Shown one piece after another: positions 3,734 to 38,772 of a stretch of DNA of 64,000 nucleotides (within the stretch, counting starts at the first letter, position 1; every line of letters begins with the position of its first letter). The notes under the pieces are model-generated. The model saw only the letters and a list, made by a program, of their open reading frames with translations. It was not told the DNA's origin and made no database searches. The translations under genes and the position numbers were made by a program. The DNA lies in contig OZ059895.1 of assembly GCA_964057225.1 (NCBI GenBank), positions 16,182,001 through 16,246,000 of the forward strand. Reading direction: 5' to 3'. The DNA comes from Auanema rhodensis. Taxonomy: Eukaryota > Animalia > Nematoda.

Positions 3734-3764
<31 letters not shown>

Positions 3765-10713: not shown

Positions 10714-11250
10714 TACAATCTCGAGTATAAATTTCATGCTTGGTGATTAGAATATCTTGAGAGTTTCACGTGAGATCCACGTACATCCACACGCTCACTT
10801 CATTTTTGAATTATAATAGCACTTGACCGGTTGTTCTTCATGTTTTAAAGTTACTTCTATACTTTTTTTTGAGAAATTCGGATGATTTTGTTTCTGTCGA
10901 GACATTAATTTTCTGAATATGCATATATGATTCTCGATGTATAAATTTAATACGAAAAATTAAAAATTATATTCTATTGAATATGAAGAAGGAAATTAAC
11001 TGATTGGCTGATTAAATAAATCATTTCAATATAATTTCCTTTTATAATAATTTAAATGAGACATATACCGTAATTATCTGCACTTAATATATTCTTGGTT
11101 TTCAGGTTTGATTGAAAAATTGAAGAAATGACAATGTTCACCGACTCAGCACTGTTTTTGTATATTTAAGCATTCAAGATCATATGTATGATATCCGACT
11201 ATCAAATAGCTAGTTTGAGCAGTATATATAAAGAGGAAGGAGGAATGGAA

Positions 11251-11386
<136 letters not shown>

Positions 11387-14088: not shown

Positions 14089-14622
14089 CCAATCCAAAAA
14101 AAATTTGAATATAATCATTAAAAATGAAAAATAGTTCACGCGTATCACGTGTGTCACGTGTTTCACGTAACACGTGTACACACGTATGCGACGGAAACAT
14201 TCCTTATATTCAAATATTTGAACATGAAGAAAAAGAAAAAAATGCAATATTGATACAGATTAATTAAATATTATTTTATTAAAAATGTATTTTTTTGACA
14301 AATGAAATGTAGTACAAGGTGATGCTTCTGCATTTACTACTTAGAACTGAAAATCTTTTTTTTTTCGTAAAAGTACAAACAATAATTTTTTTTTGTTTTG
14401 TTTTGTTTCTGTTTTTGTTTATTTTTGAATAAATTTTTTTCACTTCGCTTTTTCAAGTTTAAACATTTTATTGTTAACGACAGTACAGAAGCAATATATA
14501 AAGCTTTTTAAGATTTTTCAAACAGTCAAAATATTTTTTGTATTTAAAATTGATTATTTTTGTTTAATTAAGTTTAACTTATCGATTATTATGCTACAAT
14601 TACACAGAACTCTGATATAACA

Positions 14623-15893
14623 TCAAGAAACATGTGTAGCTGAATTTCCATATTTTGTTGTCTCCTGTTAATGAATATGACTGCTTTTCATCTCAGTGGC
14701 ATTGATCTTAGACGGATGAATTGACCTTTCTCGTAAATATGTTTGAATACGTTTCAAGATTTTTAAAAATCTTAATTGTTCCTTGACGCACTGATCGATT
14801 AAGAATTAAATATATATAAGGGGGAAGACCTGAAGCAGATAAAGACATCTATTACATCTTCGAAATATATATGAATACCTGTACAGAGTTGATATAGGAA
14901 TCCAGCACTTTTCATAAAGATTGGTGGACATTGGAAGAAAAATATGATAAGATATTGCAAAGCTGCTATATTGCATAGACTTACTATAGCTAAACATTGG
15001 AAACAAAGCTGAAATTAGTTAAATACAGTACAGTAAGATTACGGATATAAGAGGTACCGTAGCTTGACGACGTCGATGTATAACTGAGCCAAACCTATCT
15101 CGTAATCGTTTAGTTAGATTGAAGCAAAGAAAAATGCTTAAAATGCTGTTAAATGTAACAACAATAGTATTATTAAACACGAGTAGAGGACTAATATACT
15201 GAAAATTAGTCAATAAAGTTTATTATTATACGATAAAGCACGAACGTGAGCGGTTGCATTTTCATAAATTAGTGGATCCCAAACAGCTAATCCAATTTTG
15301 GCATTCAACAACATGGATGGCTCAAAGAAAAAATAGTACAGACCACAGAATAAGGGGAAAAGCATTATGCAAGGCGTATATTTTCCATTAAAAACTTTCA
15401 TTAACAACGTATTTCTGGAAGATGTTTCTGATTATCTCAGACAAAGCTGATACGAATAAATCCTTACTGAGTACTATTCAACTCAACTAATCGATTAAGG
15501 ATTAGAATTGAAGATAGAAGTGAGCCTGTTACCCAAAAACCTGGAAAATTAATGTTTTGAAGCGTATAATGAGAAACATGTTAAAGCATATATTTATTAT
15601 AAAACTTTTTAACCTACATGCTCCTAGTGATCCATTAATGTAAATACTATTTGGAGCATCACAAAAGGTCGTACCGTAATAGTAAATAATTCCTTAAAAT
15701 CCAATTCGTGAAACTTTGATAAAGTTAAAAAGTGAAACATACCGAATACAAGACCGTTACACACTGTTTCAATCATATCACAAATAGACATCACAATCAT
15801 TATTTTATATGCCGGATATATGAAGATTGTTTGTTCAAACATTACTTTTACGCAAAAAATGAAAATTATCTGCAAATAGTAGTGTCTCCTAAC

Positions 15894-15941
<48 letters not shown>

Positions 15942-16147
15942 GTTAGTATAGCTTACCTCAGTTATAAAAGAAAGAGAAGCACATAATGCTCCATATATTG
16001 GATCAGGCTCAGTGATCGCATACTTTACAAGTTCCGGAGTTCGAGCACTTAAAAAAGGAAAAGTTTTTGAATCATAAAGATATGACTAAACCTGCAATTA
16101 TATAATGGATCATCAACTATATTGCCATATCTGATTAATCGTTGCAT
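14623..16147 (-). CDS. Srt-family chemoreceptor (srt copy 2)
   Basis: MQRLIRYGNIVDDPLYNCS, YKIMIVMSICD, FCDAPNSIYING, PPYIYLILNRSVRQG; exons checked splice in frame; stop is at 14708 if the last intron is not used. Confidence 0.83.
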
Positions 16148-17169
16148 TTCGTTTTTTCAACTTAAATTCAAATGAAAACCAAAAAAAAAAAGAAAGAAAA
16201 GAAAATTTCTTCAAAGCATTTTGAGAGCAAAACAATGAAAATGAAATCAAAATCAAAGAATAAGGAATGAGCAGCTACCCGAAGTAATATGAATGAATAT
16301 AATAGTGTTAACATGGGCTTTGAGTACGAACAAGCGCCTCATGAGCATAATTAAGATATAGAAACATATGATATAAGAATATTTAAGTTAAAAGTAGAAT
16401 TAATTTACTATTAAAATATAATTATAGATATTTATAATTAAATAATTGCAACAACAACATATCACACATGTTGACACTGGTAAGAGCTATTCAATGACGA
16501 TGTTGGTGGATTACTTTGATAGATGAAAGGCAGAAGCTGGTTTGTTGGAAGAGCAGCAACAACTGTACATGTATTTCCATGATTAATAAGCCTATTGAGT
16601 TTGTTGTTTAGACAAATGTTTCGCCTCATTATATTGTTATAATAAAATATTTTTGATTATATAAGAAAAACATTCGTTATAGTTATGATTTTTTATTATT
16701 TAATTATAAATTTCTTTTATTTTATTAATAAAAATACTTCCATTTTTAGTTTTCATGTATATTTCATTTAAGTTTGTGATTTATCAGCATCGTGATCAGT
16801 AAAGATGCAGCATTAGCCTAAGATACTGGAGCTATAAGTAGACGTCGTTGATCTGCCTCAACTTAAGTATTTCTTCGAAACAATTAGTTCAAATACCGAT
16901 GAAACAAAGTGTACAAGAAAGAAATCCAATTTAAAAGTATTCTGTTCTTCAAAATCACAATACGTCTACGTATACTGAGCATATTTTGCTAGGCGTATTG
17001 CTCAAAGATTAAAAATTTTGAAAATACATCGAACTTTTATAGATAATAATGCAATTTTAAGTTTTCGTCCAATTACAATATCATTAGAGATGAAGCTTAT
17101 ACGAGTGCTGAAGATAGAGCTTCATGGTTTGCATTGATTGAACTTTTGATTTGATCTTTCCGGATTTTA

Positions 17170-18209
17170 ATATTCGAGAGTTGACTTGCTAGCATGACTT
17201 TGGAAGCTTGACTCTGCAAGCTTGACAAGATTTTCGAAGACTATCTGTAATTTATGTAAGTTTATTGAACGAGTGGAATGTACTAGGAGTATATTTATAG
17301 ATGACAAATGTAAAAATAACATGAAAAACCTAAAGAGATATCAAGGGAATTGAAGTAAAACAGGTGATATATAGTCTGGTATAGTGCTCACAGCAATTCT
17401 TCTCATAAGAAGTAGAGAATTAAAGGAAAATATGAAATCATATGTTAATGCTGTTATGACTTCATAGCGACTTACAGTAGCTTGACGTCGTAGGTCAAAC
17501 ACTGAGCTGCAACTTTCACGTACACTTCTATATATGTATCCAAGAATACTTGAGCTGTTATATTTTCATATATAAGATTATCCCAAATGATTAATCGACT
17601 ATTGAGATCAAGAAAGTGTGAGTAATTCAAAAAATAAAGGTTTTCGTATGATTATGTTCTGATGTTGTGGTATTTGCCATTCAGAATTTTCATCAACCAC
17701 TTATTACGTTGGTTTATAATTCTTTGAAGAATTTGGTAGATGCCAAACAGGATAATGCTGTGCTACAAGATTACTGATTCTGCTTCAATTTAAACAACCT
17801 TCTTGCTATCCAAATTAATTTAGTAAGAAAGTGACATCTGATGATTTGAGAAGCATAATCATACACTTCAAGAGAGACTTTCATAACTCTTACTTCCACT
17901 CAAGTAGTCCAATGGTTTAGGTAGTATCAGAAGCAGAATAGTACCAGCCTAATAGACAAAACCTTAAATGCTTAGAACTGAACGAAACAACCATCCATCA
18001 AGGCTTGTTCATATCAAATACCCAGCAAATACAAATTACCCCGTTCATATCAAAGAGAAGTAAAAGGTTTTTCTTGCTTTTTCAAGACTTCAAGCATTGT
18101 ACAAAAGGTTAAATGGTTGAAGCATCATGAAAATGCCTAATAGTTGTCACTACCTGCAGTTGTACATCAGATCATTCACTATGCTTTCATATCGCATAAC
18201 GCGCTCCAT
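17170..18209 (-). pseudogene. Srt-family pseudogene with deletions
   Basis: Exon 1 MERVMRYESIVNDLMYNCS at 18154-18209; RRQAT exon remnant at ~17420-17535 with a deletion removing a splice acceptor; middle exons not recoverable; left boundary approximate. Confidence 0.72.
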
Positions 18210-19731
18210 TGCGAGCTTTTTGAAAATTGTGCTCCGTTAGCTTCCACGATTTGTAACATTTTAAGTTATTTATAGCAAAGAGTTGCAAAGATCAAAAAAA
18301 TAAAAACTAATAGAATATACTATGAAAATTATTTTAAATAAGATTAAAATAATAAAATAGTGATATCAGTCAACATATAGTAGAATTCCAATGGGTTTAT
18401 GAAACTAAGAAAAATTCTGATATATAGATGAAGTGCTCATATCTACACATAAGCTTTATATTTTTTCAATGAAGAATAATTTGGTGATATTGATAACATT
18501 GGTGTTATTGATCATTAAATTCAAGTTTACAAGCATGTTTTATCATAATTAATGCTTGTTATATCTTTAACTTGATCATTAGAATATCATGAAAATAGGA
18601 TGAACTTTTCAACAAGCCTCAATAATAAGTTGAAGAAGTATGCATAGTTTGGGAGGTCACATCAAATTTCAGAAATAATTCTGATTAATTCATTCTATTT
18701 ATAATTAATTAATAAAGAAATTCTTGAAAATAATGTTTTCACGCCAGGCTTCTGACGAAATATTACATATATATTACATACTTTGTATTAGTATTCTTAA
18801 ACCAATTGTACCTTTTTTTCAATGGAATAAAAAATAATAATAGAATAAGCATGTGCAACAAAATATCAAAGTATCAGTGTTATATATACTCAAACATCAG
18901 TGTTATATATACTCAAAGTTGAAGAATGGATGGCTTTGCAAGCTACAGCTGATTTCGCCTAACTTATTCAACGAGTACTTCGTGTTTTGCACATACATAC
19001 ATATTTCTTATATGATTGTTCATATAAAATATAAATATTTAGTGGTACTAACTTAGAAAAACGATTTTTATTTCATTAGTTCGAACTTCGTTTGTATTAT
19101 AATATCATTGCATTCAACATTTTAAGAATTTTTTATCATATTATTATTATTATTATGAAGGAAGTTGGTTTGTACTTTTAAGTTCGATTTCTATAATCAA
19201 AAATTTCTCTTTAACACACGTAAAATAATAATTATAATTAATATAAGTAATATTAACAGCTTTTAAAATTATATAAGTAGTGCTTAAAAGCACATTTTCA
19301 TTAAAACGTCTTGACTCTTCTTTTGCTTTCAAGTTGTATAATGAATATTATAATTGAATAATAATGCTAATAATATTTATTATAATATATATAGAAACTT
19401 ATAATGAAAATGTATAATATAAAACTAAATTTTATACTTATGATTCTAATTATATTGTGTAGTTTATCAACTAATTGCTATTAAAGATGTGCATTTGAAT
19501 ATAATATATGGAAATACGTAATAGTAATAAACGTGATAATTAAGAAAATCACCTAGACTTGTTGTAGTTGTGATAACATTTCTTTCAACCTTTGGAAGAC
19601 AAAATCATGAATTCCTATTTATACATATAATATATTTCAAATAATATATTAAAAAATATTTGTAAACGTCAAACTATTCTTATAATTGCTATGACGATGT
19701 GAATAAGCTTAGATGACAGTCAGAATGATCT

Positions 19732-21329
19732 TCAGGCCACTGGTGTAACATTATCACTTGGTACAATAGTACTTAATTTTGATGTAACTTTAAGACTTTT
19801 GGGTTGGAGATTTGGAGTATTTGTTACCGTTTTTGAATCTTAATAGCAATATTGGAATGCATACATATTGGTTCACAAATTTTACTAAATATAGAAGGTT
19901 TATACTTATATGCCATCTTGAAAACTCCTTGACGAATAGATCGATTCAGACATATGTAGATATATGGTGGTAAACCTGAAAGCAGGTTGTAAAATGCTTG
20001 TAAGAAGTAAGAAGCGCATTACTTGTACAGATTTGATGTGATATGCCAGCCATTCTTCTCAAAAATGGTGGACAATCAAAGATAAAAGTGCAATCATATA
20101 GTATAGATCCTATATTACTTAACGTAACCAAAGTTAAGCATTGAACAAAAAGCTGAAAAGATGGCAAAGATGATGATGGCTAATGGTGATTGATGGCATC
20201 ATGCATCACAATGTACCGTAGCTTGACGTCGCCTATCCATAGCTGAACCAAAGTTTTCGCTTAAGCTTTTGGATATGTTAAAGCATAAAACAACGCTCAA
20301 TAACAGATTCAATGATACAACAACAGTATTATTGATTATAAGTACGAGCATGAAGTACTGAAATGAATGAGATTAATGTTAATGAAAAGTGATGTCGACT
20401 TGTAGTGAAGCATTTTCATAAATTAACGGATCCCACATGGCTGAACCACTTTTTGGATCATATGCTAATCCAGGTTCATGAATCAAGCTGTATATTCCAA
20501 CAGATATTGGAAAAAGCATAGTAAGTGAAGTATAATTACCATTAAAGATATGAACTAAATACTTGTTTCTAAAGTTTCATAATGATTAATTCATAAAAGT
20601 TGAAGATCAGAAAGATTAAAGAAGAAAAAACAAGATGGGGAAGAGAACTAAAGAGTTCTTACTTAGCAGAATTGATTTCCACCAAACGGTTTATGATAAG
20701 AAGCGTAGATAGAAGTGAACCTGTTATCCAGACACCTGAAGGATGAAGCTTAGATTGATTAAGTAGAAAGGAATAGCATTACTTGAGCCAATTGATCCGG
20801 TTATGTATACAAAGTTAGGAGCATCGCAGAAAGTTAAACCATAATAATGAGAAATTCCTTCAAAAGTTAGAAGACAAATGACAAAATTGAATAGAAAATA
20901 CCATAGACAAAACCATTATAAGCAGTTCCACACATATCACATATGGATAATACAACCATAATCTTGTAGGCTGGATAGACAAAGTTGGAAGGTTCTAGCA
21001 TAACTTTCACACAGAGAATGAACAGAATCTATAATTTAAACGATTAGTTTTAATGACAACGAACAAGATGAATTTCAGAAGTACTTCATTGATAACACCC
21101 AGAGTGAAGCATGCAATACCATATCCTGGCTCAGGCTCAGTATAAACTTTTGCCGTTATTTCCGGAGAACGAGCACTTAAACATAACTTCTTATCAAGTA
21201 ATTAATAAGAAACAGTTGAGCAAATAGATTCAGAAAAGTTGGTAAAGATAGAAAAAAAGATAAATGGCCAAACCTGCAATTGTAAAGCGGATCATTAGTG
21301 ATAGTTCCATACTTCATTAGGCGTTGCAT
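19732..21329 (-). CDS. Srt-family chemoreceptor (srt copy 3)
   Basis: MQRLMKYGTITNDPLYNCS, VMLEPSNFVYPAYKIMVVLSICD, FCDAPNFVYITGS, PPYIYICLNRSIRQG; last exon inferred. Confidence 0.85.
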
Positions 21330-22265
21330 TCCCTAAAATTATTTTTGAAATATAAACAAAATACTTAAAATTTGAAAAGAAAATATTATGAAAATATATT
21401 TGAACTATAAAATATTTCAAATGGATGGGATATATGGGTGGGCAGCGAATACAAATACATGTCTCCTGGAATTGTGTGTAACAAGTGCAAATATGAAACA
21501 AAACTGAAGATTATGATATTCAAAAAAATATGGAAAATTCAGAAAATCAGATTGAATTTTTAGAAAACAGAGCTGAATTATACATAAAGATCATCGCAAC
21601 GCATATACAGATGTATTAACATCACACAGTGCTTCTTACCAGCTTAGATTTTGCTTCTTCAACGTTGTTGTGAATGAACAAAGACTAACATAGCAGATAT
21701 TACTGCTAATTTGAAATCTTAAAAAAGGTACTGAAATGTATTCGCACACCAATTGTGAATTTGGAAAAACGTACGTAAAACTTGACTTCAAATCGCTATA
21801 TATTCTATTTTCAGGACTAAATTGGTCATCTCATATAGTGAATGTATTCGAAATCACTTCTACAAACTCTTCTACATGATATATGCAAATTAGGTTTCAC
21901 GTAGGCTTATCATCCATATCTCTACCAGATCGTTGATCAACGACTCAATTTGTATTATAGTTATCATCAACTTACAGAATATATCTAACGTTGAGAACTA
22001 TTTGTTCTTATGCACACGTCACATAACATTTTATTTATACAAATATATTAATATAATATTGTCTATGACCTCATTCACGGATATTCATAACTATACTACC
22101 GAAAAGAAAAATTGTAGTATAGAAGTAAGTTTATAACATGAAGAACAACCGGTCAAGTGCTATTGTTATTCAAAAATGAAGTGTGCGTGTGGATGTACGT
22201 GGATCTCACGTGAAACTCTCTAGATATTCTAATGACGAAGCATGAAATTTATACTTCAGATTGTA

Positions 22266-22426
22266 AGGGACGCGCGAACGCATCCCCAAACGCAAAAATT
22301 TAGCTGTTGGCGAATCTCAACTCGAGATTGCCATACAGGTCAGCCCAATCGAAAAGTGCAATGATCAGGCCTCTTCGTAGAGAGCCCGCCTTGATGATCG
22401 CGGGCAGCTCCCAGCCAGGTAAGTTT
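22266..22426 (-). ncRNA. U1: U1 snRNA (array copy 1)
   Basis: Reverse complement of the U1 at 9820-9980. Confidence 0.95.
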
Positions 22427-22522
22427 AATGGTCAACTCAATGAGTCTAACAGGCCATACCTTGTTTGGTATCTCATATGGGTTTCACTTTCTTAAAATTC
22501 TTGAAAATTAAAGAAAAATATT

Positions 22523-22604
22523 CGATCAGGATGAGATTCGAACTCACGCGGGGAAACCCCAATGGATTAGCAGTCCATCGCCTTAACCACTCGGCCACCT
22601 GATC
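22523..22604 (-). tRNA. tRNA-Ser(GCT)
   Basis: Reverse complement of 10375-10456. Confidence 0.96.
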
Positions 22605-22684
22605 ACACAATGTACACTTTTGCTGATAATTTAGCCTCAGGGCATTACAGGGAAGAGAAAAAAATTGATATGGAGCAAAAGATT

Positions 22685-22756
22685 CTCCCCGGCCGGGAAT
22701 TGAACCCGGGTCTCGCATGTGACAGACGCGGATACTCACCACTATACTACCGAGGA
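22685..22756 (-). tRNA. tRNA-Asp(GTC)
   Basis: Reverse complement of 10223-10294. Confidence 0.96.
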
Positions 22757-22998
22757 CATGTAATCATTCTATTGTAGAATACGGAAGTTTTGAACCCAAT
22801 CTTCTCCTTGAGCTTCAATGATCACAATTTCCTGAAAAGAAAAATTGTAGTATAGAAGTAAGTTTATAACATGAAGAACAACCGGTCAAGTGCTATTATA
22901 ATTCAAAAATGGAGTGAGCATGTGGATGTACGTGGATCTCACGTGAAACTCTCAAGATATTCTAATCACCAAACATGAAATTTATACTTCAGATTGTA

Positions 22999-23159
22999 AG
23001 GGACGCGCGAACGCATCCCCAAACGCAAAAATTTAGCTGTTGGCGAATCTCAACTCGAGATTGCCATACAGGTCAGCCCAATCGAAAAGTGCAATGATCA
23101 GGCCTCTTCGTAGAGAGCCCGCCTTGATGATCGCGGGCAGCTCCCAGCCAGGTAAGTTT
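22999..23159 (-). ncRNA. U1: U1 snRNA (array copy 2)
   Basis: Full-length U1 copy. Confidence 0.95.
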
Positions 23160-23253
23160 AATGGTCAACTCAATGAGTCTAACAGGCCATACCTTGTTTG
23201 GTATCTCATATGGGTTTCACTTTATTCAATTTCTGAATCTTGAGGAAAACATT

Positions 23254-23335
23254 CGAAAAGGCGTAGATGGCAACTGAGATCAGGAAATCTCAGTGATATT
23301 GAAAAGCTTACCGTTCACTATTCAGCCACCTGATC
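23254..23335 (-). pseudogene. Degenerate tRNA-Ser-derived element
   Basis: 82 nt, colinear with tRNA-Ser at the same position in the unit; stems and B-box broken. Confidence 0.8.
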
Positions 23336-23579
23336 ACACAATGAACAGATTTATTCAGAATTAACCCTCAGGGCATTGTCACGTCTCCCTAAGCTTCAAT
23401 GATCACAATTTCCTGAAAAGAAAAATTGTAGTATAGAAGTAAGTTTATAACATGAAGAACAACCGGTCAAGTGCTATTATTATTCAAAAATGAAGTGAGC
23501 GTGTGGATGTACGTGGATCTCACGTGAAACTCTCTAGATATTCTAATGACGAAGCATGAAATTTATACTTCAGATTGTA

Positions 23580-23740
23580 AGGGACGCGCGAACGCATCCC
23601 CAAACGCAAAAATTTAGCTGTTGGCGAATCTCAACTCGAGATTGCCATACAGGTCAGCCCAATCGAAAAGTGCAATGATCAGGCCTCTTCGTAGAGAGCC
23701 CGCCTTGATGATCGCGGGCAGCTCCCAGCCAGGTAAGTTT
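23580..23740 (-). ncRNA. U1: U1 snRNA (array copy 3)
   Basis: Full-length U1 copy. Confidence 0.95.
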
Positions 23741-23836
23741 AATGGTCAACTCAATGAGTCTAACAGGCCATACCTTGTTTGGTATCTCATATGGGTTTCA
23801 CTTTCTTAAAATTCTTGAAAATTAAAGAAAAATATT

Positions 23837-23918
23837 CGATCAGGATGAGATTCGAACTCACGCGGGGAAACCCCAATGGATTAGCAGTCCATCGCCTTAA
23901 CCACTCGGCCACCTGATC
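23837..23918 (-). tRNA. tRNA-Ser(GCT)
   Basis: Intact copy. Confidence 0.96.
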
Positions 23919-23998
23919 ACACAATGTACACTTTTGCTGATAATTTAGCCTCAGGGCATTACAGGGAAGAGAAAAAAATTGATATGGAGCAAAAGATT

Positions 23999-24070
23999 CT
24001 CCCCGGCCGGGAATTGAACCCGGGTCTCGCATGTGACAGACGCGGATACTCACCACTATACTACCGAGGA
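23999..24070 (-). tRNA. tRNA-Asp(GTC)
   Basis: Intact copy. Confidence 0.96.
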
Positions 24071-24312
24071 CATGTAATCATTCTATTGTAGAATACGGAA
24101 GTTTTGAACCCAATCTTCTCCTTGAGCTTCAATGATCACAATTTCCTGAAAAGAAAAATTGTAGTATAGAAGTAAGTTTATAACATGAAGAACAACCGGT
24201 CAAGTGCTATTATAATTCAAAAATGGAGTGAGCATGTGGATGTACGTGGATCTCACGTGAAACTCTCAAGATATTCTAATCACCAAACATGAAATTTATA
24301 CTTCAGATTGTA

Positions 24313-24473
24313 AGGGACGCGCGAACGCATCCCCAAACGCAAAAATTTAGCTGTTGGCGAATCTCAACTCGAGATTGCCATACAGGTCAGCCCAATCGAA
24401 AAGTGCAATGATCAGGCCTCTTCGTAGAGAGCCCGCCTTGATGATCGCGGGCAGCTCCCAGCCAGGTAAGTTT
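24313..24473 (-). ncRNA. U1: U1 snRNA (array copy 4)
   Basis: Full-length U1 copy. Confidence 0.95.
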
Positions 24474-24567
24474 AATGGTCAACTCAATGAGTCTAACAGG
24501 CCATACCTTGTTTGGTATCTCATATGGGTTTCACTTTATTCAATTTCTGAATCTTGAGGAAAACATT

Positions 24568-24649
24568 CGAAAAGGCGTAGATGGCAACTGAGATCAGGAA
24601 ATCTCAGTGATATTGAAAAGCTTCCCGTTCACTATTCAGCCACCTGATC
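24568..24649 (-). pseudogene. Degenerate tRNA-Ser-derived element
   Basis: As 23254-23335. Confidence 0.8.
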
Positions 24650-24893
24650 ACACAATGAACAGATTTATTCAGAATTAACCCTCAGGGCATTGTCACGTCT
24701 CCCTAAGCTTCAATGATCACAATTTCCTGAAAAGAAAAATTGTAGTATAGAAGTAAGTTTATAACATGAAGAACAACCGGTCAAGTGCTATTATAATTCA
24801 AAAATGGAGTGAGCATGTGGATGTACGTGGATCTCACGTGAAACTCTCAAGATATTCTAATCACCAAACATGAAATTTATACTCGAGATTGTA

Positions 24894-25054
24894 AGGGACG
24901 CGCGAACGCATCCCCAAACGCAAAAATTTAGCTGTTGGCGAATCTCAACTCGAGATTGCCATACAGGTCAGCCCAATCGAAAAGTGCAATGATCAGGCCT
25001 CTTCGTAGAGAGCCCGCCTTGATGATCGCGGGCAGCTCCCAGCCAGGTAAGTTT
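24894..25054 (-). ncRNA. U1: U1 snRNA (array copy 5)
   Basis: Full-length U1 copy. Confidence 0.95.
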
Positions 25055-25150
25055 AATGGTCAACTCAATGAGTCTAACAGGCCATACCTTGTTTGGTATC
25101 TCATATGGGTTTCACTTTCTTAAAATTCTTGAAAATTAAAGAAAAATATT

Positions 25151-25232
25151 CGATCAGGATGAGATTCGAACTCACGCGGGGAAACCCCAATGGATTAGCA
25201 GTCCATCGCCTTAACCACTCGGCCACCTGATC
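25151..25232 (-). tRNA. tRNA-Ser(GCT)
   Basis: Intact copy. Confidence 0.96.
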
Positions 25233-25312
25233 ACACAATGTACACTTTTGCTGATAATTTAGCCTCAGGGCATTACAGGGAAGAGAAAATAATTGATATG
25301 GAGCAAAAGATT

Positions 25313-25384
25313 CTCCCCGGCCGGGAATTGAACCCGGGTCTCGCATGTGACAGACGCGGATACTCACCACTATACTACCGAGGA
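25313..25384 (-). tRNA. tRNA-Asp(GTC)
   Basis: Intact copy. Confidence 0.96.
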
Positions 25385-25626
25385 CATGTAATCATTCTAT
25401 TGTAGAATACGGAAGTTTTGAACCCAATCTTCTCCTTGAGCTTCAATGTTCACAATTTCCTGAAAAGAAAAATTGTAGTATAGAAGTAAGTTTATAACAT
25501 GAAGAACAACCGGTCAAGTGCTATTATAATTCAAAAATGGAGTGAGCATGTGGATGTACGTGGATCTCACGTGAAACTCTCAAGATATTCTAATCACCAA
25601 ACATGAAATTTATACTTCAGATTGTA

Positions 25627-25787
25627 AGGGACGCGCGAACGCATCCCCAAACGCAAAAATTTAGCTGTTGGCGAATCTCAACTCGAGATTGCCATACAGG
25701 TCAGCCCAATCGAAAAGTGCAATGATCAGGCCTCTTCGTAGAGAGCCCGCCTTGATGATCGCGGGCAGCTCCCAGCCAGGTAAGTTT
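25627..25787 (-). ncRNA. U1: U1 snRNA (array copy 6)
   Basis: Full-length U1 copy. Confidence 0.95.
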
Positions 25788-25881
25788 AATGGTCAACTCA
25801 ATGAGTCTAACAGGCCATACCTTGTTTGGTATCTCATATGGGTTTCACTTTATTCAATTTCTGAATCTTGAGGAAAACATT

Positions 25882-25963
25882 CGAAAAGGCGTAGATGGCA
25901 ACAGAGATCAGGAAATCTCAGTGATATTGAAAAGCTTCCCGTTCACTATTCAGCCACCTGATC
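25882..25963 (-). pseudogene. Degenerate tRNA-Ser-derived element
   Basis: As 23254-23335 with point variants. Confidence 0.8.
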
Positions 25964-26207
25964 ACACAATGAACAGATTTATTCAGAATTAACCCTCAGG
26001 GCATTGTCACGTCTCCCTAAGCTTCAATGATCACAGTTTTTCTGAAAAAAAATTTGTAGTATAGAAGTAACTTTAAAACATGAAGAACAACCGGTCAAGT
26101 GCTATTATAATTCAAAAATGGAGTGAGCATGTGGATGTACGTGGATCTCACGTGAAACTCTCAAGATATTCTAATCACCAAACATGAAATTTATACTCGA
26201 GATTGTA

Positions 26208-26368
26208 AGGGACGCGCGAACGCATCCCCAAACGCAAAAATTTAGCTGTTGGCGAATCTCAACTCGAGATTGCCATACAGGTTAGCCCAATCGAAAAGTG
26301 CAATGATCAGGCCTCTTCGTAGAGAGCCCGCCTTGATGATCGCGGGCAGCTCCCAGCCAGGTAAGTTT
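26208..26368 (-). ncRNA. U1: U1 snRNA (array copy 7, one substitution)
   Basis: Full-length U1; + strand T instead of C at 26283. Confidence 0.94.
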
Positions 26369-26462
26369 AATGGTCAACTCAATGAGTCTAACAGGCCATA
26401 CCTTGTTTGGTATCTCATATGGGTTTCACTTTATTCAATTTCTGAATCTTGAGGAAAACATT

Positions 26463-26544
26463 CGAAAAGGCGTAGATGGCAACAGAGATCAGGAAATCTC
26501 AGTGATATTGAAAAACTTCCCGTTCACTATTCAGCCACCTGATC
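26463..26544 (-). pseudogene. Degenerate tRNA-Ser-derived element
   Basis: As 23254-23335 with point variants. Confidence 0.8.
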
Positions 26545-26788
26545 ACACAATGAACAGATTTATTCAGAATTAACCCTCAGGGCATTGTCACGTCTCCCTA
26601 AGCTTCAATGATCACAGTTTTTCTGAAAAAAAATTTGTAGTATAGAAGTAACTTTAAAACATGAAGAACAACCGGTCAAGTGCTATTATAATTCAAAAAT
26701 GGAGTGAGCATGTGGATGTACGTGGATCTCACGTGAAACTCTCAAGATATTCTAATCACCAAACATGAAATTTATACTCGAGATTGTA

Positions 26789-26949
26789 AGGGACGCGCGA
26801 ACGCATCCCCAAACGCAAAAATTTAGCTGTTGGCGAATCTCAACTCGAGATTGCCATACAGGTCAGCCCAATCGAAAAGTGCAATGATCAGGCCTCTTCG
26901 TAGAGAGCCCGCCTTGATGATCGCGGGCAGCTCCCAGCCAGGTAAGTTT
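26789..26949 (-). ncRNA. U1: U1 snRNA (array copy 8)
   Basis: Full-length U1 copy. Confidence 0.95.
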
Positions 26950-27045
26950 AATGGTCAACTCAATGAGTCTAACAGGCCATACCTTGTTTGGTATCTCATA
27001 TGGGTTTCACTTTCTTAAAATTCTTGAAAATTAAAGAAAAATATT

Positions 27046-27127
27046 CGATCAGGATGAGATTCGAACTCACGCGGGGAAACCCCAATGGATTAGCAGTCCA
27101 TCGCCTTAACCACTCGGCCACCTGATC
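27046..27127 (-). tRNA. tRNA-Ser(GCT)
   Basis: Intact copy. Confidence 0.96.
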
Positions 27128-27207
27128 ACACAATGTACACTTTTGCTGATAATTTAGCCTCAGGGCATTACAGGGAAGAGAAAATAATTGATATGGAGCA
27201 AAAGATT

Positions 27208-27279
27208 CTCCCCGGCCGGGAATTGAACCCGGGTCTCGCATGTGACAGACGCGGATACTCACCACTATACTACCGAGGA
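27208..27279 (-). tRNA. tRNA-Asp(GTC)
   Basis: Intact copy. Confidence 0.96.
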
Positions 27280-27521
27280 CATGTAATCATTCTATTGTAG
27301 AATACGGAAGTTTTGAACCCAATCTTCTCCTTGAGCTTCAATGTTCACAATTTCCTGAAAAGAAAAATTGTAGTATAGAAGTAAGTTTATAACATGAAGA
27401 ACAACCGGTCAAGTGCTATTATAATTCAAAAATGGAGTGAGCATGTGGATGTACGTGGATCTCACGTGAAACTCTCAAGATATTCTAATCACCAAACATG
27501 AAATTTATACTCGAGATTGTA

Positions 27522-27682
27522 AGGGACGCGCGAACGCATCCCCAAACGCAAAAATTTAGCTGTTGGCGAATCTCAACTCGAGATTGCCATACAGGTCAGC
27601 CCAATCGAAAAGTGCAATGATCAGGCCTCTTCGTAGAGAGCCCGCCTTGATGATCGCGGGCAGCTCCCAGCCAGGTAAGTTT
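27522..27682 (-). ncRNA. U1: U1 snRNA (array copy 9)
   Basis: Full-length U1 copy. Confidence 0.95.
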
Positions 27683-27776
27683 AATGGTCAACTCAATGAG
27701 TCTAACAGGCCATACCTTGTTTGGTATCTCATATGGGTTTCACTTTATTCAATTTCTGAATCTTGAGGAAAACATT

Positions 27777-27858
27777 CGAAAAGGCGTAGATGGCAACTGA
27801 GATCAGGAAATCTCAGTGATATTGAAAAGCTTCCCGTTCACTATTCAGCCACCTGATC
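27777..27858 (-). pseudogene. Degenerate tRNA-Ser-derived element
   Basis: As 23254-23335. Confidence 0.8.
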
Positions 27859-28102
27859 ACACAATGAACAGATTTATTCAGAATTAACCCTCAGGGCATT
27901 GTCACGTCTCCCTAAGCTTCAATGATCACAGTTTTTCTGAAAAAAAATTTGTAGTATAGAAGTAACTTTAAAACATGAAGAACAACCGGTCAAGTGCTAT
28001 TATAATTCAAAAATGGAGTGAGCATGTGGATGTACGTGGATCTCACGTGAAACTCTCAAGATATTCTAATCACCAAACATGAAATTTATACTCGAGATTG
28101 TA

Positions 28103-28263
28103 AGGGACGCGCGAACGCATCCCCAAACGCAAAAATTTAGCTGTTGGCGAATCTCAACTCGAGATTGCCATACAGGTCAGCCCAATCGAAAAGTGCAATG
28201 ATCAGGCCTCTTCGTAGAGAGCCCGCCTTGATGATCGCGGGCAGCTCCCAGCCAGGTAAGTTT
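28103..28263 (-). ncRNA. U1: U1 snRNA (array copy 10)
   Basis: Full-length U1 copy. Confidence 0.95.
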
Positions 28264-28359
28264 AATGGTCAACTCAATGAGTCTAACAGGCCATACCTTG
28301 TTTGGTATCTCATATGGGTTTCACTTTCTTAAAATTCTTGAAAATTAAAGAAAAATATT

Positions 28360-28441
28360 CGATCAGGATGAGATTCGAACTCACGCGGGGAAACCCCAAT
28401 GGATTAGCAGTCCATCGCCTTAACCACTCGGCCACCTGATC
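28360..28441 (-). tRNA. tRNA-Ser(GCT)
   Basis: Intact copy. Confidence 0.96.
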
Positions 28442-28521
28442 ACACAATGTACACTTTTGCTGATAATTTAGCCTCAGGGCATTACAGGGAAGAGAAAATA
28501 ATTGATATGGAGCAAAAGATT

Positions 28522-28593
28522 CTCCCCGGCCGGGAATTGAACCCGGGTCTCGCATGTGACAGACGCGGATACTCACCACTATACTACCGAGGA
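28522..28593 (-). tRNA. tRNA-Asp(GTC)
   Basis: Intact copy. Confidence 0.96.
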
Positions 28594-28835
28594 CATGTAA
28601 TCATTCTATTGTAGAATACGGAAGTTTTGAACCCAATCTTCTCCTTGAGCTTCAATGATCACAATTTCCTGAAAAGAAAAATTGTAGTATAGAAGTAAGT
28701 TTATAACATGAAGAACAACCGGTCAAGTGCTATTATAATTCAAAAATGGAGTGAGCATGTGGATGTACGTGGATCTCACGTGAAACTCTCAAGATATTCT
28801 AATCACCAAACATGAAATTTATACTCGAGATTGTA

Positions 28836-28996
28836 AGGGACGCGCGAACGCATCCCCAAACGCAAAAATTTAGCTGTTGGCGAATCTCAACTCGAGATTG
28901 CCATACAGGTCAGCCCAATCGAAAAGTGCAATGATCAGGCCTCTTCGTAGAGAGCCCGCCTTGATGATCGCGGGCAGCTCCCAGCCAGGTAAGTTT
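28836..28996 (-). ncRNA. U1: U1 snRNA (array copy 11)
   Basis: Full-length U1 copy. Confidence 0.95.
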
Positions 28997-29090
28997 AATG
29001 GTCAACTCAATGAGTCTAACAGGCCATACCTTGTTTGGTATCTCATATGGGTTTCACTTTATTCAATTTCTGAATCTTGAGGAAAACATT

Positions 29091-29172
29091 CGAAAAGGCG
29101 TAGATGGCAACTGAGATCAGGAAATCTCAGTGATATTGAAAAGCTTCCCGTTCACTATTCAGCCACCTGATC
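29091..29172 (-). pseudogene. Degenerate tRNA-Ser-derived element
   Basis: As 23254-23335. Confidence 0.8.
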
Positions 29173-29416
29173 ACACAATGAACAGATTTATTCAGAATTA
29201 ACCCTCAGGGCATTGTCACGTCTCCCTAAGCTTCAATGATCACAGTTTTTCTGAAAAAAAATTTGTAGTATAGAAGTAACTTTAAAACATGAAGAACAAC
29301 CGGTCAAGTGCTATTATAATTCAAAAATGGAGTGAGCATGTGGATGTACGTGGATCTCACGTGAAACTCTCAAGATATTCTAATCACCAAACATGAAATT
29401 TATACTCGAGATTGTA

Positions 29417-29577
29417 AGGGACGCGCGAACGCATCCCCAAACGCAAAAATTTAGCTGTTGGCGAATCTCAACTCGAGATTGCCATACAGGTCAGCCCAAT
29501 CGAAAAGTGCAATGATCAGGCCTCTTCGTAGAGAGCCCGCCTTGATGATCGCGGGCAGCTCCCAGCCAGGTAAGTTT
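29417..29577 (-). ncRNA. U1: U1 snRNA (array copy 12)
   Basis: Full-length U1 copy. Confidence 0.95.
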
Positions 29578-29673
29578 AATGGTCAACTCAATGAGTCTAA
29601 CAGGCCATACCTTGTTTGGTATCTCATATGGGTTTCACTTTCTTAAAATTCTTGAAAATTAAAGAAAAATATT

Positions 29674-29755
29674 CGATCAGGATGAGATTCGAACTCACGC
29701 GGGGAAACCCCAATGGATTAGCAGTCCATCGCCTTAACCACTCGGCCACCTGATC
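29674..29755 (-). tRNA. tRNA-Ser(GCT)
   Basis: Intact copy. Confidence 0.96.
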
Positions 29756-29835
29756 ACACAATGTACACTTTTGCTGATAATTTAGCCTCAGGGCATTACA
29801 GGGAAGAGAAAATAATTGATATGGAGCAAAAGATT

Positions 29836-29907
29836 CTCCCCGGCCGGGAATTGAACCCGGGTCTCGCATGTGACAGACGCGGATACTCACCACTATACTA
29901 CCGAGGA
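29836..29907 (-). tRNA. tRNA-Asp(GTC)
   Basis: Intact copy. Confidence 0.96.
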
Positions 29908-30149
29908 CATGTAATCATTCTATTGTAGAATACGGAAGTTTTGAACCCAATCTTCTCCTTGAGCTTCAATGTTCACAATTTCCTGAAAAGAAAAATTGTA
30001 GTATAGAAGTAAGTTTATAACATGAAGAACAACCGGTCAAGTGCTATTATAATTCAAAAATGGAGTGAGCATGTGGATGTACGTGGATCTCACGTGAAAC
30101 TCTCAAGATATTCTAATCACCAAACATGAAATTTATACTCGAGATTGTA

Positions 30150-30310
30150 AGGGACGCGCGAACGCATCCCCAAACGCAAAAATTTAGCTGTTGGCGAATC
30201 TCAACTCGAGATTGCCATACAGGTCAGCCCAATCGAAAAGTGCAATGATCAGGCCTCTTCGTAGAGAGCCCGCCTTGATGATCGCGGGCAGCTCCCAGCC
30301 AGGTAAGTTT
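30150..30310 (-). ncRNA. U1: U1 snRNA (array copy 13)
   Basis: Full-length U1 copy. Confidence 0.95.
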
Positions 30311-30405
30311 AATGGTCAACTCAATGAGTCTAACAGGCCATACCTTGTTTAGTATCTCATATGGGTTTCTCTTCTATCCAATATATGAACTAGAGAGAAA
30401 ACATT

Positions 30406-30487
30406 CGAAAATGCTTAGATGGCAACTCAGATCAGGAAATCTCAGTGATATTGAAAAGCTTCCCGTTCACTATTCAGCCACCTGATC
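30406..30487 (-). pseudogene. Degenerate tRNA-Ser-derived element (terminal, more diverged)
   Basis: As 23254-23335 with three further substitutions. Confidence 0.78.
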
Positions 30488-31125
30488 ACACAATGAACAG
30501 ATTTATTCAGAATTAACCCTCAGGGCATTGTCTGGAAGAAAACAAATGAAATGTATGTATGAAAAATGTTATATGAAATGATGTATGAGTCGAATTTTAA
30601 GATGTTCTGATTATCATTTCAGATTGCATTCTATTCTTCTCCAAAACAATCCTTGAATAGAGATGTGGATTTAAGAAGTTTATAATATTCTACACACATT
30701 TTTCTAATTGATGATCAAAAGTTAATTCAAATCAAGTTATATAACCAACCTTGATTTATGTTTGTAGAAATGTTTTTGTTTCAACCGCTAATTTGAAGAT
30801 GAAATAGATTAATTAATCAAAAAATAGTTTTTATTATTATTGTGTGTGTGTGTGTATATGTGTGTCTTACGATCAACACATTTATCAAATCGAGAACATC
30901 GGCGGCGTAAGTGGTTATAAACAGAAAAGCTTCGGTTCAATGTCGATATATCTGCCAATAACAAGAATTTTTTTCTTCTTCTGTCGTCTATGAAGCCTAA
31001 TCCAAGGACTACTTCGCATTCTCCTCCTATCTCTCGTTTATCGTAGGTGTAGAAGCAGAATAAAGTGGTAGAAAGGGAAGGAAGATGAAAAGAAAGAAAT
31101 ATGAAGAGAAATTCATAGACTGCTT

Positions 31126-31173
<48 letters not shown>

Positions 31174-31940: not shown

Positions 31941-32023
<83 letters not shown>

Positions 32024-34729: not shown

Positions 34730-36315
34730 TTAGTTGTCCGCGTTTTCTACAGTTGGCTGAGGAGTATCTGCTCGGAACAGATCATCGATAGTCGGAATTA
34801 AAGATTTGGACTCATTTCTCTGAGCCTTAAGAGCATTCCTCATTTTTAAAATTTCAGGATCTATGTTGGTAGGGGTAATCGTTATTCCTCCTTCGGGAAT
34901 ACCATTAGCTCTTGTGCGAAGAGGATCAAGAAAAGCCTGTAACAAAAGGTTTTATCGATACAACGAACTTGATCAAACCTGTGCTGCTGATATTTCTGTG
35001 CAAGGGATGTCAGGCTCAAAATCTCGCAAATCATTCATCTGAATGTTACTCATAAGACCTTTTATAACCGCTCGATAATTTTCGGGCAAGTAGTCAGCTT
35101 CTTTTTCAACATCATCTAACAAAGAGAGAATAACTGAAGCTTCTACAAATTATTTAAAGTTATTCTGGATAGATTGACAAGCAAACCCATAGCATTAACA
35201 CCAGGCATGCTGATTTTTCCCGCTAAAGCTGTTTCAATGAACTCAGAAATCCGAGACCAGTCAAGCTTCGCTGTTTTATCCTGGAAGGGGGATAGCACGG
35301 AGTTTGTTATCTGCAATTAGAAAATGTATGAAGCTGCCAAAAATACATCGGATCGTACTTTAACATCAACAGCATTTTTTGGGGCTAATCTGGCAAAGTT
35401 TTTCTAGAAATAGCAAACATAATGAAACAAATATTCCAATACATTAAACATACAGCTAATACATTCGCCATGGTAGATTGATCAAATCCTTTTCTCATCT
35501 TGTCGACTCTAGAAATAGCTGAAGGCCATCCAACAACGGGTCTTCCTGACTTAAAAGGCGAGAAAAAGAAAAATAACTGAGAAATACTCTAAGAACATAC
35601 TTTATCAATAAGTTGAAGCCTTGCCGGTGGTTGAACATTCTTGTAGCCTAATGTGGTCCATTTAGTGACTTCATCAGAAAATCTCTCTACACGATGTTCA
35701 CTTACCATTTCTCTTATTTCTTCTAATTTCGATCTTTAAAAAGAATTTGTCTCAAAACAGATATTCATACAGAAAACGTACTGTACTTCCTCCAACGAAC
35801 GTGAACCTAATCGTGAACATATGTATTCAATAGCCTTCTGCGAAGTACCATAGCTGAAAGGCAGATTCAATTTGTAAGAACGTAGAAGCGAAGGTTAGAA
35901 CTCACGTTGTTATTCCATCATAAAGTTTTTTAAGTTCTTCACTACTCCAGTCACCTTGGTTATATCTGCCATTTTCTCTTAAACGCTGAATCAAAATGAT
36001 TTTTCTTCTCTTTCAATCAAATATTACTTTTTCCAGAGGTGTAGGCTCTACCATGACATCTTCCACATCCAGTAAATCTCCATCCTACAAGAGTTCACAA
36101 TGTTAGAAAGCAATAGACACACAGACATTTAGCCTACTTCAACATATCTGTCATTTTCTTCATCTGGTTCCATAACATCCGTAATTTTGTATCGTTCTGG
36201 TTCCATAGTATCTCTCTTCTCTAAAAATAAGAAATAAGCTTTTGTTTCAAAAACAACGTAAAATACCTGCTGATTCAGGAGCTGGATTGGACGGCAGTTT
36301 TCGTTTAGGTGGCAT
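34730..36315 (-). CDS. SANT/Myb-domain nuclear protein, SNAPC2 (SNAP45)-like
   Basis: 11 in-frame exons; MPPKRK NLS-like start; SANT repeat GDWSSEELKKLYDGITTYGTSQKAIEYICSRLGSRSLEEVQSKL; LDWSRISEFIETALAGKISMPGVNAMEASVILSLLDDVEKE resembles the recalled SNAPC2 core. Gene model solid, family call tentative. Confidence 0.65.
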
Positions 36316-36511: not shown

Positions 36512-38579
<2,068 letters not shown>

Positions 38580-38772
38580 TTATGTTCACAATATAATCTA
38601 AAATTAAAGAAAAAAAGGAATATTCTCAAATTGAAGTCAGTCAGATAAAATAATGAATAGAACATGGTGTTAATGAGAAAGAAAAATTTCTATTATAATT
38701 CATAAAATAGGCATAACGCAATGCATATAATTAAGGAAAGAAACAAAGATCGATGGAAAGTTACAATTGGAA

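What the first reader, a model, noticed from the sequence alone, without database searches (positions are those of the whole stretch)
22101..30530. Higher-order tandem array interleaving U1 snRNA (Pol II) with tRNA-Asp and tRNA-Ser (Pol III)
Seen: 13 co-oriented U1 genes; six are preceded by an intact tRNA-Asp>tRNA-Ser pair (733-bp unit) and seven by a degenerate tRNA-Ser without tRNA-Asp (581-bp unit). The units alternate as a 1314-bp higher-order repeat with one extra short unit near 26.2 kb. Spacer variants change in blocks along the array (AAAAAAATTG vs AAAATAATTG; GTAAGTTTATAAC vs GTAACTTTAAAAC), as expected from unequal crossing-over. Known: nematodes link SL1 with 5S in tandem repeats, and trypanosome snRNA genes use neighbouring tRNA A/B boxes. 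I do not know of a U1-tRNA(Asp)-tRNA(Ser) alternating array in nematodes but cannot exclude prior description. Inference: co-amplified splicing/translation RNA dosage in a very intron-dense genome, and a natural test of whether an upstream active tRNA gene affects U1 transcription.
Basis: partly seen in the sequence, partly recalled or inferred. Interest (0 to 1): 0.8.

Follow-up and report, generated by a model that had tools for sequence, protein, structure and literature searches.

The report
U1 and tRNA gene tandem array
A roundworm chromosome carries 13 head-to-tail copies of the U1 splicing-RNA gene, about every second one preceded by intact tRNA-Asp and tRNA-Ser genes. It is a real, tidy example of small-RNA genes amplified together, a known kind of arrangement with an unusual partner, and the scan had already noted larger sister arrays nearby.

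Summary
There are 13 co-oriented U1 genes on the minus strand between 22,265 and 30,310. Twelve are identical and one has a single change. The spacing alternates 733 and 581 bp, with one short-short step at 26.2 kb.

Six units carry intact tRNA-Asp(GTC) and tRNA-Ser(GCT). Seven carry a collinear but decayed tRNA-Ser relic and lack tRNA-Asp.

Between the mini-cluster and the array, the genes show 0 differences in 478 bases and the 96-bp U1 promoter spacer shows 0 in 96. The other spacers show 27-35 differences in 566 (p about 1e-8 or lower). So U1, both tRNAs and the promoter appear to be under constraint.

All 15 U1 genes share only positions -57 to -1. The tRNAs are therefore most likely co-amplified, independently transcribed neighbours rather than promoter parts.

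The scan had already found U1 plus tRNA-Asp arrays on the same chromosome piece, including one of about 60 units. This is a new variant of a known kind, linked small-RNA gene arrays.

Copy number and expression could not be tested.

The parts
22101..30553 (-). Whole tandem array: 13 units, made of an edge short unit, six 733-bp long units, six 581-bp short units and a 164-bp 3' tail
   Evidence: edges
30149..30310 (-). U1 gene 1 (edge short unit)
   Evidence: 107.9 bits
29416..29577 (-). U1 gene 2 (long unit)
28835..28996 (-). U1 gene 3 (short unit)
28102..28263 (-). U1 gene 4 (long unit)
27521..27682 (-). U1 gene 5 (short unit)
26788..26949 (-). U1 gene 6 (long unit)
26207..26368 (-). U1 gene 7 (extra short unit); the only variant copy, G86A
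25626..25787 (-). U1 gene 8 (short unit)
24893..25054 (-). U1 gene 9 (long unit)
24312..24473 (-). U1 gene 10 (short unit)
23579..23740 (-). U1 gene 11 (long unit)
22998..23159 (-). U1 gene 12 (short unit)
22265..22426 (-). U1 gene 13 (long unit, last)
29836..29907 (-). tRNA-Asp(GTC). Identical copies at 28522-28593, 27208-27279, 25313-25384, 23999-24070 and 22685-22756
29673..29756 (-). tRNA-Ser(GCT). Identical copies at 28359-28442, 27045-27128, 25150-25233, 23836-23919 and 22522-22605
24568..24649 (-). Decayed tRNA-Ser relic of a short unit. Like relics lie about 95-176 nt upstream of the U1 genes at 30310, 28996, 27682, 26368, 25787 and 23159
   Evidence: 50/82 identical to the intact gene, box B core broken, not called by ARAGORN or Rfam
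23741..23797 (-). U1 promoter core, -57 to -1, shared by all 15 U1 genes. A candidate PSE with an AACCC core lies near -57, and there is no TATA box
22077..22101 (-). Probable 5' fragment of tRNA-Asp at the 3' edge of the array
   Evidence: 22/25 match; one of 200 shuffles reached the score
9763..10863 (+). Inverted mini-cluster: U1 (9820-9981), tRNA-Asp (10223-10294), tRNA-Ser (10374-10457), U1 (10553-10714)

Best explanation
This is a genuine multigene array that supplies U1 snRNA. Working tRNA-Asp(GTC) and tRNA-Ser(GCT) genes were amplified along with it.

Each gene is its own transcription unit. U1 is read by RNA polymerase II from a compact promoter of SNAPc type within the last 57-62 bp upstream. 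Each tRNA is read by polymerase III from its internal A and B boxes and stops at its own T-run.

The ancestral unit was tRNA-Asp, tRNA-Ser, U1 (733 bp). One copy lost about 150 bp, including tRNA-Asp, and its tRNA-Ser decayed, giving the 581-bp type. The long-plus-short dimer (1314 bp) was then amplified by unequal exchange, and an out-of-register exchange added one extra short unit.

Concerted evolution keeps U1, its promoter and the 3' spacer alike in both unit types. Purifying selection keeps U1 and both tRNAs unchanged.

The structure, the sequence constraint and the promoter boundary are shown here. Transcription, polymerase assignment and the order of historical events are inferred.
For: **U1 is canonical.**
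- It matches the Rfam model over its full length.
- It has the ACUUACCUG 5' end, stem-loop I and II loop motifs, the Sm site AAUUUUUG and a 3' hairpin.
- Its fold energy is -63.2 kcal/mol, z = -3.4.

**The tRNAs look functional.**
- Both give cloverleaf calls at 55 and 64 bits, and their T4 and T5 terminators are read directly from the sequence.

**Sequence constraint, mini-cluster against array.**
- The genes show 0 differences in 478 bases, including 0 in 154 for the tRNAs.
- The tRNA-Ser-to-U1 spacer shows 0 in 96.
- The remaining spacers show 27-35 in 566.
- Fisher p is 3e-10 to 7e-8 for all genes and 0.0004-0.003 for the tRNAs alone.

**Promoter boundary.**
- Long and short units become identical at -62.
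- The two edge copies share only -57 to -1.
- An ACCC core near -57 also lies upstream of unrelated snRNA genes in metagenome loci.

**Higher-order repeat.**
- Dimers are 99.2-100% alike.
- Long and short units compare at 98% in the 3' spacer, 100% in U1 and -62 to -1, but 61-70% in the tRNA-Ser segment.
- Neighbouring units are most alike, and divergence grows toward the 3' end.

**Real copies.**
- Nine different sequences occur among the 12 internal units, and the truncated edge unit differs again.
- This argues for distinct real copies rather than a copied-out consensus.

**Against polymerase III making U1.**
- The T5 run inside the Sm site would stop polymerase III, and there is no TATA box at -30.
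Against: - No expression data. None of the 15 runs that hold the locus is on record as RNA, and all are kept only as contigs.
- The absence of change in the genes could partly reflect gene conversion confined to those segments rather than selection.
- The promoter motif was not scored against a nematode SNAPc matrix, because the published logos are figures that are not held as text.
- The relic segment is better conserved between the edge short unit and the internal short units (79/82) than the 30 bp next to it (22/32). This is unexplained.
Confidence: 0.75

Rival explanations
1. Functional coupling. The upstream tRNA genes, bound by TFIIIC and TFIIIB, act as an enhancer, a nucleosome-free anchor or a chromatin barrier for the U1 gene 96 bp downstream. 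Only, or mainly, the six long-unit U1 genes would then be active or differently regulated, and the tRNAs are kept for that reason.
For: - tRNA-Ser always ends exactly 96 bp before U1, and that whole spacer is invariant between the array and the mini-cluster.
- The linkage recurs in several arrays of this genome.
- Trypanosomatids offer a precedent for tRNA-dependent snRNA expression (PMC10781861).
Against: - Seven array U1 genes keep a perfect gene and promoter behind a dead relic whose box B core is broken.
- The intact U1 at 9820 has no tRNA or relic upstream at all.
- Here the tRNAs point the same way as U1. As I recall, not checked in the text read, the trypanosomatid tRNAs are divergent.
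- Trypanosomatid snRNAs are polymerase III products, whereas this U1 carries an internal T5 run.
Confidence: 0.12
2. Assembly artefact. The locus holds far fewer units, and the assembler expanded or mis-ordered a near-identical repeat. The extra short unit would also be an artefact.
For: - Units are 98-100% alike, which is hard to assemble.
Against: - Nine different sequences among the 12 internal units, arranged in an ordered gradient.
- A unique U1 variant in one copy.
- Clean, different edges at both ends.
- An independent mini-cluster.
- Nine runs from three studies hold more than half of the sampled words of the array edge plus flank.
- An earlier follow-up judged the sister array real. 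I did not check this.
Confidence: 0.08
3. Dead satellite. The units are U1 and tRNA pseudogenes that spread as a non-functional tandem repeat.
For: The tandem amplification is recent, so identity alone does not prove function.
Against: - Genes and promoter are unchanged where spacers differ by about 5-6%.
- All functional motifs of U1 and both tRNAs are intact.
- A truly dead tRNA-Ser in the short units shows what decay looks like here.
Confidence: 0.04

Closest known systems
C. elegans 5S rDNA-SL1 tandem repeat (over 100 copies of about 1 kb; PMC11822377)
   Same: It is a nematode head-to-tail array. Each unit joins a small-RNA gene read by polymerase II with a SNAPc-type promoter to a polymerase III gene.
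   Different: There the partners are SL1 and 5S rRNA, not U1 and tRNAs. The two genes point in opposite directions, whereas here all are co-oriented. No two-type higher-order repeat is described there.
U1 plus tRNA-Asp arrays of the same genome (scan notes s1-429743, s1-419735, s1-419254)
   Same: They lie on the same chromosome piece, 62-275 kb before this window. They pair U1 with tRNA-Asp in tandem units. The earlier follow-up reached the same reading, co-amplified neighbours.
   Different: Those notes mention no tRNA-Ser and no alternation of two unit types, and one note calls its U1 a variant. I could not read those sequences, so the relationship is untested.
5S rDNA-U1 and U1-U2-U5(-5S) linked tandem repeats in crustaceans, fishes, molluscs and corals (PMC3464664; PMC8167085)
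   Same: U1 genes are amplified in tandem together with other small-RNA genes, including polymerase III genes, and evolve in concert.
   Different: The partner genes are 5S or other snRNAs. A tRNA partner for U1 is not reported in those papers, and none was found in 27 metagenome U1 loci.
[quoted passage not shown] 1994, as cited in PMC10781861)
   Same: A tRNA gene or tRNA-like relic sits about 100 bp upstream of an snRNA gene.
   Different: There all snRNAs are polymerase III products and need the tRNA A and B boxes. Here U1 carries an internal T5 run, has its own conserved proximal promoter, and eight of the 15 copies lack an intact tRNA upstream.
Entamoeba tRNA gene arrays (PMC2652664), and the human 1p36 snRNA-tRNA cluster (recalled from memory, not found in the library)
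   Same: tRNA genes are amplified in tandem units, in some cases with another small-RNA gene (5S). As I recall it, U1 and tRNA genes are interspersed in a large repeat cluster in humans.
   Different: Entamoeba units hold no snRNA. As I recall, the human repeat units are tens of kilobases rather than 0.6-0.7 kb. That recollection is a lead, not a test.

Membership tests
U1 spliceosomal snRNA gene (Rfam RF00003) | Covariance-model score above the gathering threshold over the full model | tested here: met
   15 copies at 107.2-107.9 bits against a threshold of 69.5, model positions 1-166
U1 spliceosomal snRNA gene (Rfam RF00003) | 5' splice-site pairing sequence ACUUACCUG, stem-loops I-IV with the loop I and loop II protein-binding motifs, and an Sm site | tested here: met
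   Alignment to the model and the minimum-energy fold; sequence
U1 spliceosomal snRNA gene (Rfam RF00003) | SNAPc-type proximal element upstream without a TATA box (polymerase II class) | tested here: inconclusive
   The -57 to -1 block is invariant in 15 copies, has an AACCC core near -57 and has no TATA box. It was not scored against a nematode SNAPc matrix.
U1 spliceosomal snRNA gene (Rfam RF00003) | Transcribed and assembled into the snRNP | not testable with these tools
Nuclear tRNA genes (polymerase III type 2) | Cloverleaf with anticodon, internal A and B boxes, and a T-run terminator | tested here: met
   ARAGORN calls Asp-GTC and Ser-GCT. Rfam gives 55.4 and 64 bits. T4 and T5 runs lie within about 10 nt downstream.
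Nuclear tRNA genes (polymerase III type 2) | Sequence kept unchanged where neighbouring DNA drifts | tested here: met
   0 differences in 154 bases against 27-35 in 566 for spacers, p = 0.0004-0.003
Higher-order tandem repeat | Two diverged monomer types alternate, and copies of the multimer are more alike than the monomers within it | tested here: met
   Spacing alternates 733 and 581 bp. Dimers are 99.2-100% alike. Monomer types are 61-70% alike in the tRNA-Ser segment.
Nematode 5S rDNA-SL1 type linked array | The unit pairs a SNAPc-dependent polymerase II small-RNA gene with a polymerase III gene | tested here: met
   U1 plus two tRNAs in the long unit. Polymerase assignment rests on established knowledge of these gene classes.
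Nematode 5S rDNA-SL1 type linked array | The partners are SL1 and 5S rRNA in divergent orientation | tested here: not met
   No 5S or SL RNA reaches the gathering score anywhere in the window, and all genes of the array are on one strand
Trypanosomatid tRNA-dependent snRNA promoter | The snRNA gene is a polymerase III unit | tested here: not met
   A T5 run inside the gene at the Sm site would terminate polymerase III, and there is no TATA box. This is read from the sequence, not assayed.
Trypanosomatid tRNA-dependent snRNA promoter | Every snRNA gene has an upstream tRNA or tRNA-like element with usable A and B boxes | tested here: not met
   Seven copies have a relic with three mismatches in the box B core. 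One intact copy (9820) has none.

The most novel reading that the evidence does not exclude
The tRNA genes are kept in these arrays because TFIIIC-bound tRNA genes protect the tandem U1 units from repeat-induced silencing, or set their chromatin state. Long and short units would then be two differently regulated classes of U1 gene, for example germline against soma, in a worm that also eliminates DNA from body cells.
Probability: 0.1. Interest if true: 0.7.

Novelty: new variant of a known kind. Interest (0 to 1): 0.4.

Why it matters
Tandem arrays that join small-RNA genes read by different polymerases are known, for example 5S with SL1 in nematodes and 5S with U1 elsewhere. I found no description of U1 joined to tRNA genes in compact co-oriented units, nor of a two-type higher-order repeat of such units.

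With the sister arrays, the locus suggests this worm holds many times the 14 or so U1 genes reported for C. elegans. These are concentrated in one chromosome region, and tRNA-Asp is amplified with them.

The array is also a ready-made comparison. Identical U1 genes and promoters sit behind either two live tRNA genes or a dead relic, which could show whether a neighbouring polymerase III gene helps, hinders or ignores a polymerase II snRNA promoter. The value lies in genome organisation and as an experimental handle. It does not reveal a new mechanism.

Tried and rejected
1. **Reads.** The look-up of sequencing runs gave 15 runs from 4 studies under three organism labels. All are kept as contigs and none is on record as RNA. 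Depth, junctions, relatives and expression therefore stayed untested. Only local alignment and counting used them.

2. **Relatives.**
   - A metagenome scan for U1 genes starting AAAC gave 27 loci. U1 there is linked with U2, U4, U5, 5S, U3 or SSU rRNA, but never with a tRNA. The closest U1 is only about 80% alike, so these are not close relatives.
   - The look-up of encoding contigs with the 165-aa ORF beside the array found nothing.
   - The window has no long intron-free gene.

3. **Literature.** Seven searches found no U1-tRNA tandem array. The nematode SNAPc motif is published only as figures. The organism was not identified.

5. **Rejected ideas.**
   - Retroposed copies are ruled out. 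The units are head to tail, carry their promoters and have no poly-A tail.
   - The 89-aa ORFs across the tRNA pair are artefacts of reading through tRNA genes.
   - The 20-codon ORF behind a splice-acceptor-like site in the long spacer is broken by a stop in the short units and in the mini-cluster.
   - The relic is not a new structured RNA (z about -1).
   - No tRNA-Asp relic lies at the 5' flank.

Full report
**What is there**

Rfam at gathering thresholds finds 15 full-length U1 snRNA genes in the window. Thirteen lie on the minus strand between 22265 and 30310, and two on the plus strand at 9820-9981 and 10553-10714. Fourteen are identical, and the copy at 26207-26368 has one change, G86A.

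ARAGORN and Rfam agree on seven tRNA-Asp(GTC) and seven tRNA-Ser(GCT) genes. Six pairs are in the array and one pair lies between the two plus-strand U1 genes.

U1 spacing in the array, from low to high coordinates, is 733, 581, 733, 581, 733, 581, 581, 733, 581, 733, 581, 733. The array is richer in G+C (41-42%) than its flanks (30-37%).

**Anatomy of the units, in the direction of transcription (minus strand)**

The long unit holds:
- a 241-bp spacer
- tRNA-Asp (72 nt)
- an 80-bp spacer
- tRNA-Ser (82 nt)
- a 96-bp spacer
- U1 (162 nt)

Each tRNA is followed within about 10 nt by a T4 or T5 run.

The short unit lacks about 150 bp, covering the end of the first spacer, tRNA-Asp and the start of the next spacer. 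Where tRNA-Ser should be, it carries a collinear stretch of the same length that is only 50/82 identical. This stretch has two mismatches to the box A consensus as I recall it and three in the box B core. Neither tRNA tool calls it, and it has no significant fold (z about -1).

Long and short units compare as follows (U1):

| Segment | Identity |
|---|---|
| 3' spacer | 191/195 |
| U1 | 162/162 (one short-unit copy has G86A) |
| -62 to -1 | 62/62 |
| tRNA-Ser leader | 33/47 |
| tRNA-Ser body | 50/82 |
| Next 32 aligned bp | 22/32 |

Copies of the 1314-bp dimer are 99.2-100% alike. This is a true higher-order repeat.

The array starts at about 30553 with a truncated short-type unit. It ends at 22101, 164 bp after the last U1, where a 22/25 match to the 5' part of tRNA-Asp follows directly. 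One of 200 shuffles reached that score, so I call the fragment probable.

**Second cluster**

At 9763-10863, on the other strand and pointing toward the array, lies U1, tRNA-Asp, tRNA-Ser, U1, with the same 733-bp step. It starts only 57 bp before its first U1, about 80 bp after the end of a lectin-like gene. The 11 kb between this cluster and the array holds paralogous Srt-family chemoreceptor genes. That family marks the genome as a nematode's, as the scan's notes also say.

**Are the genes alive?**

U1 has every hallmark of a working gene: the ACUUACCUG 5' end, four stem-loops with the loop I and loop II motifs, the Sm site AAUUUUUG and a stable 3' hairpin.

The useful test is the mini-cluster against the array, because these two have drifted apart. 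Differences are:
- 0 in 478 bases for the four genes, including 0 in 154 for the two tRNAs
- 0 in 96 for the spacer between tRNA-Ser and U1
- 27-35 in 566 for the other spacers

Fisher p is 3e-10 to 7e-8 for the genes and 0.0004-0.003 for the tRNAs alone. The decayed tRNA-Ser of the short units shows what loss of constraint looks like at this locus. I conclude that U1, both tRNAs and the U1 promoter region are under constraint, although conversion limited to those segments could contribute.

**Promoter**

All 15 U1 genes share -57 to -1 with at most two changes. Long and short units become identical at -62, and the two edge copies share nothing further upstream. The block has an AACCC core near -57 and no TATA box near -30. 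An ACCC(G) core at the same distance precedes U1, U2 and U5 genes of unrelated metagenome loci.

Published work places the nematode SNAPc motif within 100 bp upstream of snRNA genes and finds a TATA box only at the polymerase III ones (PMC6436959). I could not score the motif itself, because it is given only in figures. The T5 run in the Sm site would stop polymerase III, which fits the established polymerase II class of Sm snRNAs.

**How it most likely works**

The three genes are independent units that were amplified together.
- **Shown:** the structure, the constraint, and the fact that eight of 15 intact U1 genes have no live tRNA upstream while keeping an identical promoter.
- **Inferred:** the history. 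A 733-bp ancestor underwent a deletion, and its tRNA-Ser decayed in that copy. The dimer was then amplified by unequal exchange, and one out-of-register exchange added a short unit.

Neighbouring units are most alike, and divergence rises toward the 3' end. Short-unit differences from the first internal short unit are 0, 3, 1, 10 and 20, as expected for local exchange. Nine different sequences among the 12 internal units argue against a copied-out assembly artefact.

**What I could not test**

Fifteen public runs from four studies hold the array edge and its flank, under three organism labels. All are kept as contigs and none is on record as RNA.

Copy number, unit order, expression and presence in the other two organism labels are therefore open.

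The window has no long intron-free gene. A single-ORF look-up found nothing.

**Comparison with what is known**

- The closest described case in nematodes is the C. elegans 5S rDNA-SL1 repeat. It has over 100 units of about 1 kb, each pairing a polymerase III gene with a polymerase II gene in opposite orientation. The same paper counts 14 U1 promoters among the snRNA promoters bound by the factor it studied (PMC11822377).
- U1 linked in tandem with 5S or with U2 and U5 is reported in crustaceans, fishes, molluscs and corals (PMC3464664; PMC8167085).
- Entamoeba has tRNA arrays, some with 5S (PMC2652664).
[quoted passage not shown] The features of that system are not met here.
- Seven literature searches found no U1-tRNA tandem array.
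- None of 27 metagenome U1 loci had a tRNA.
- I recall a human 1p36 cluster of U1 and tRNA genes with very large units, but I could not confirm it in the library.

**Earlier notes of this scan**

On the same chromosome piece the scan had already noted U1 plus tRNA-Asp arrays 62, 122 and 275 kb before this window. A follow-up of the largest, about 60 units, judged it real and read the genes as co-amplified neighbours. I could not read those sequences. My independent evidence from this window leads to the same reading. It adds the tRNA-Ser partner, the two-type repeat, the mini-cluster and the constraint test.

**Verdict**

This is a new variant of a known kind and of moderate interest, mainly as a well-defined natural comparison for crosstalk between polymerase II and polymerase III genes.

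Noticed in passing
window 12500-21500: A cluster of paralogous Srt-family serpentine chemoreceptor genes in both orientations fills the gap between the U1 mini-cluster and the array. Evidence is Pfam PF10321 on exon ORFs, plus inverted repeats up to 291 nt at 89%.
   Followed up: partly
window 3503-3558 and 9616-9671: Two paralogous gene 3' ends that look like lectin-type domains by eye (77% alike at the DNA level). The second stops about 80 bp before the edge of the U1 mini-cluster.
   Followed up: no
window 11209-11408, 31128-31172, 31941-32023 (also 3640-3800, 15861-15956): (GA)n/(TC)n tracts lie within about 0.4-0.6 kb of both U1 clusters, but they are also common elsewhere in the window. 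No special link is shown.
   Followed up: no
window 34730-36315: An earlier scan note places a SNAPC2-like SANT protein gene about 4.4 kb from the array (s1-393756). I did not examine it.
   Followed up: no
L013:239-3256 and L017:1-3707 (metagenome contigs): U3, U1, U4, U5, U2 and 5S genes stand in one row just upstream of a eukaryotic SSU rRNA gene, so snRNA genes lie inside an rDNA spacer of an unidentified eukaryote. Other contigs show U1+U5+5S (L004, L007, L020) and U5-U2-U1 (L019, L025).
   Followed up: no
window 30405-30553 versus internal short units, e.g. 24568-24700: The dead tRNA-Ser relic and its leader are nearly identical between the edge unit and the internal short units (79/82 and 45/47). 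The 32 aligned bp just downstream of the relic are only 22/32 alike. This is unexplained and may mark a conversion-tract boundary.
   Followed up: partly
window 37116-38600, minus strand: Exons of a protein kinase gene (Pfam PF00069, E = 6e-23 on one exon ORF).
   Followed up: no
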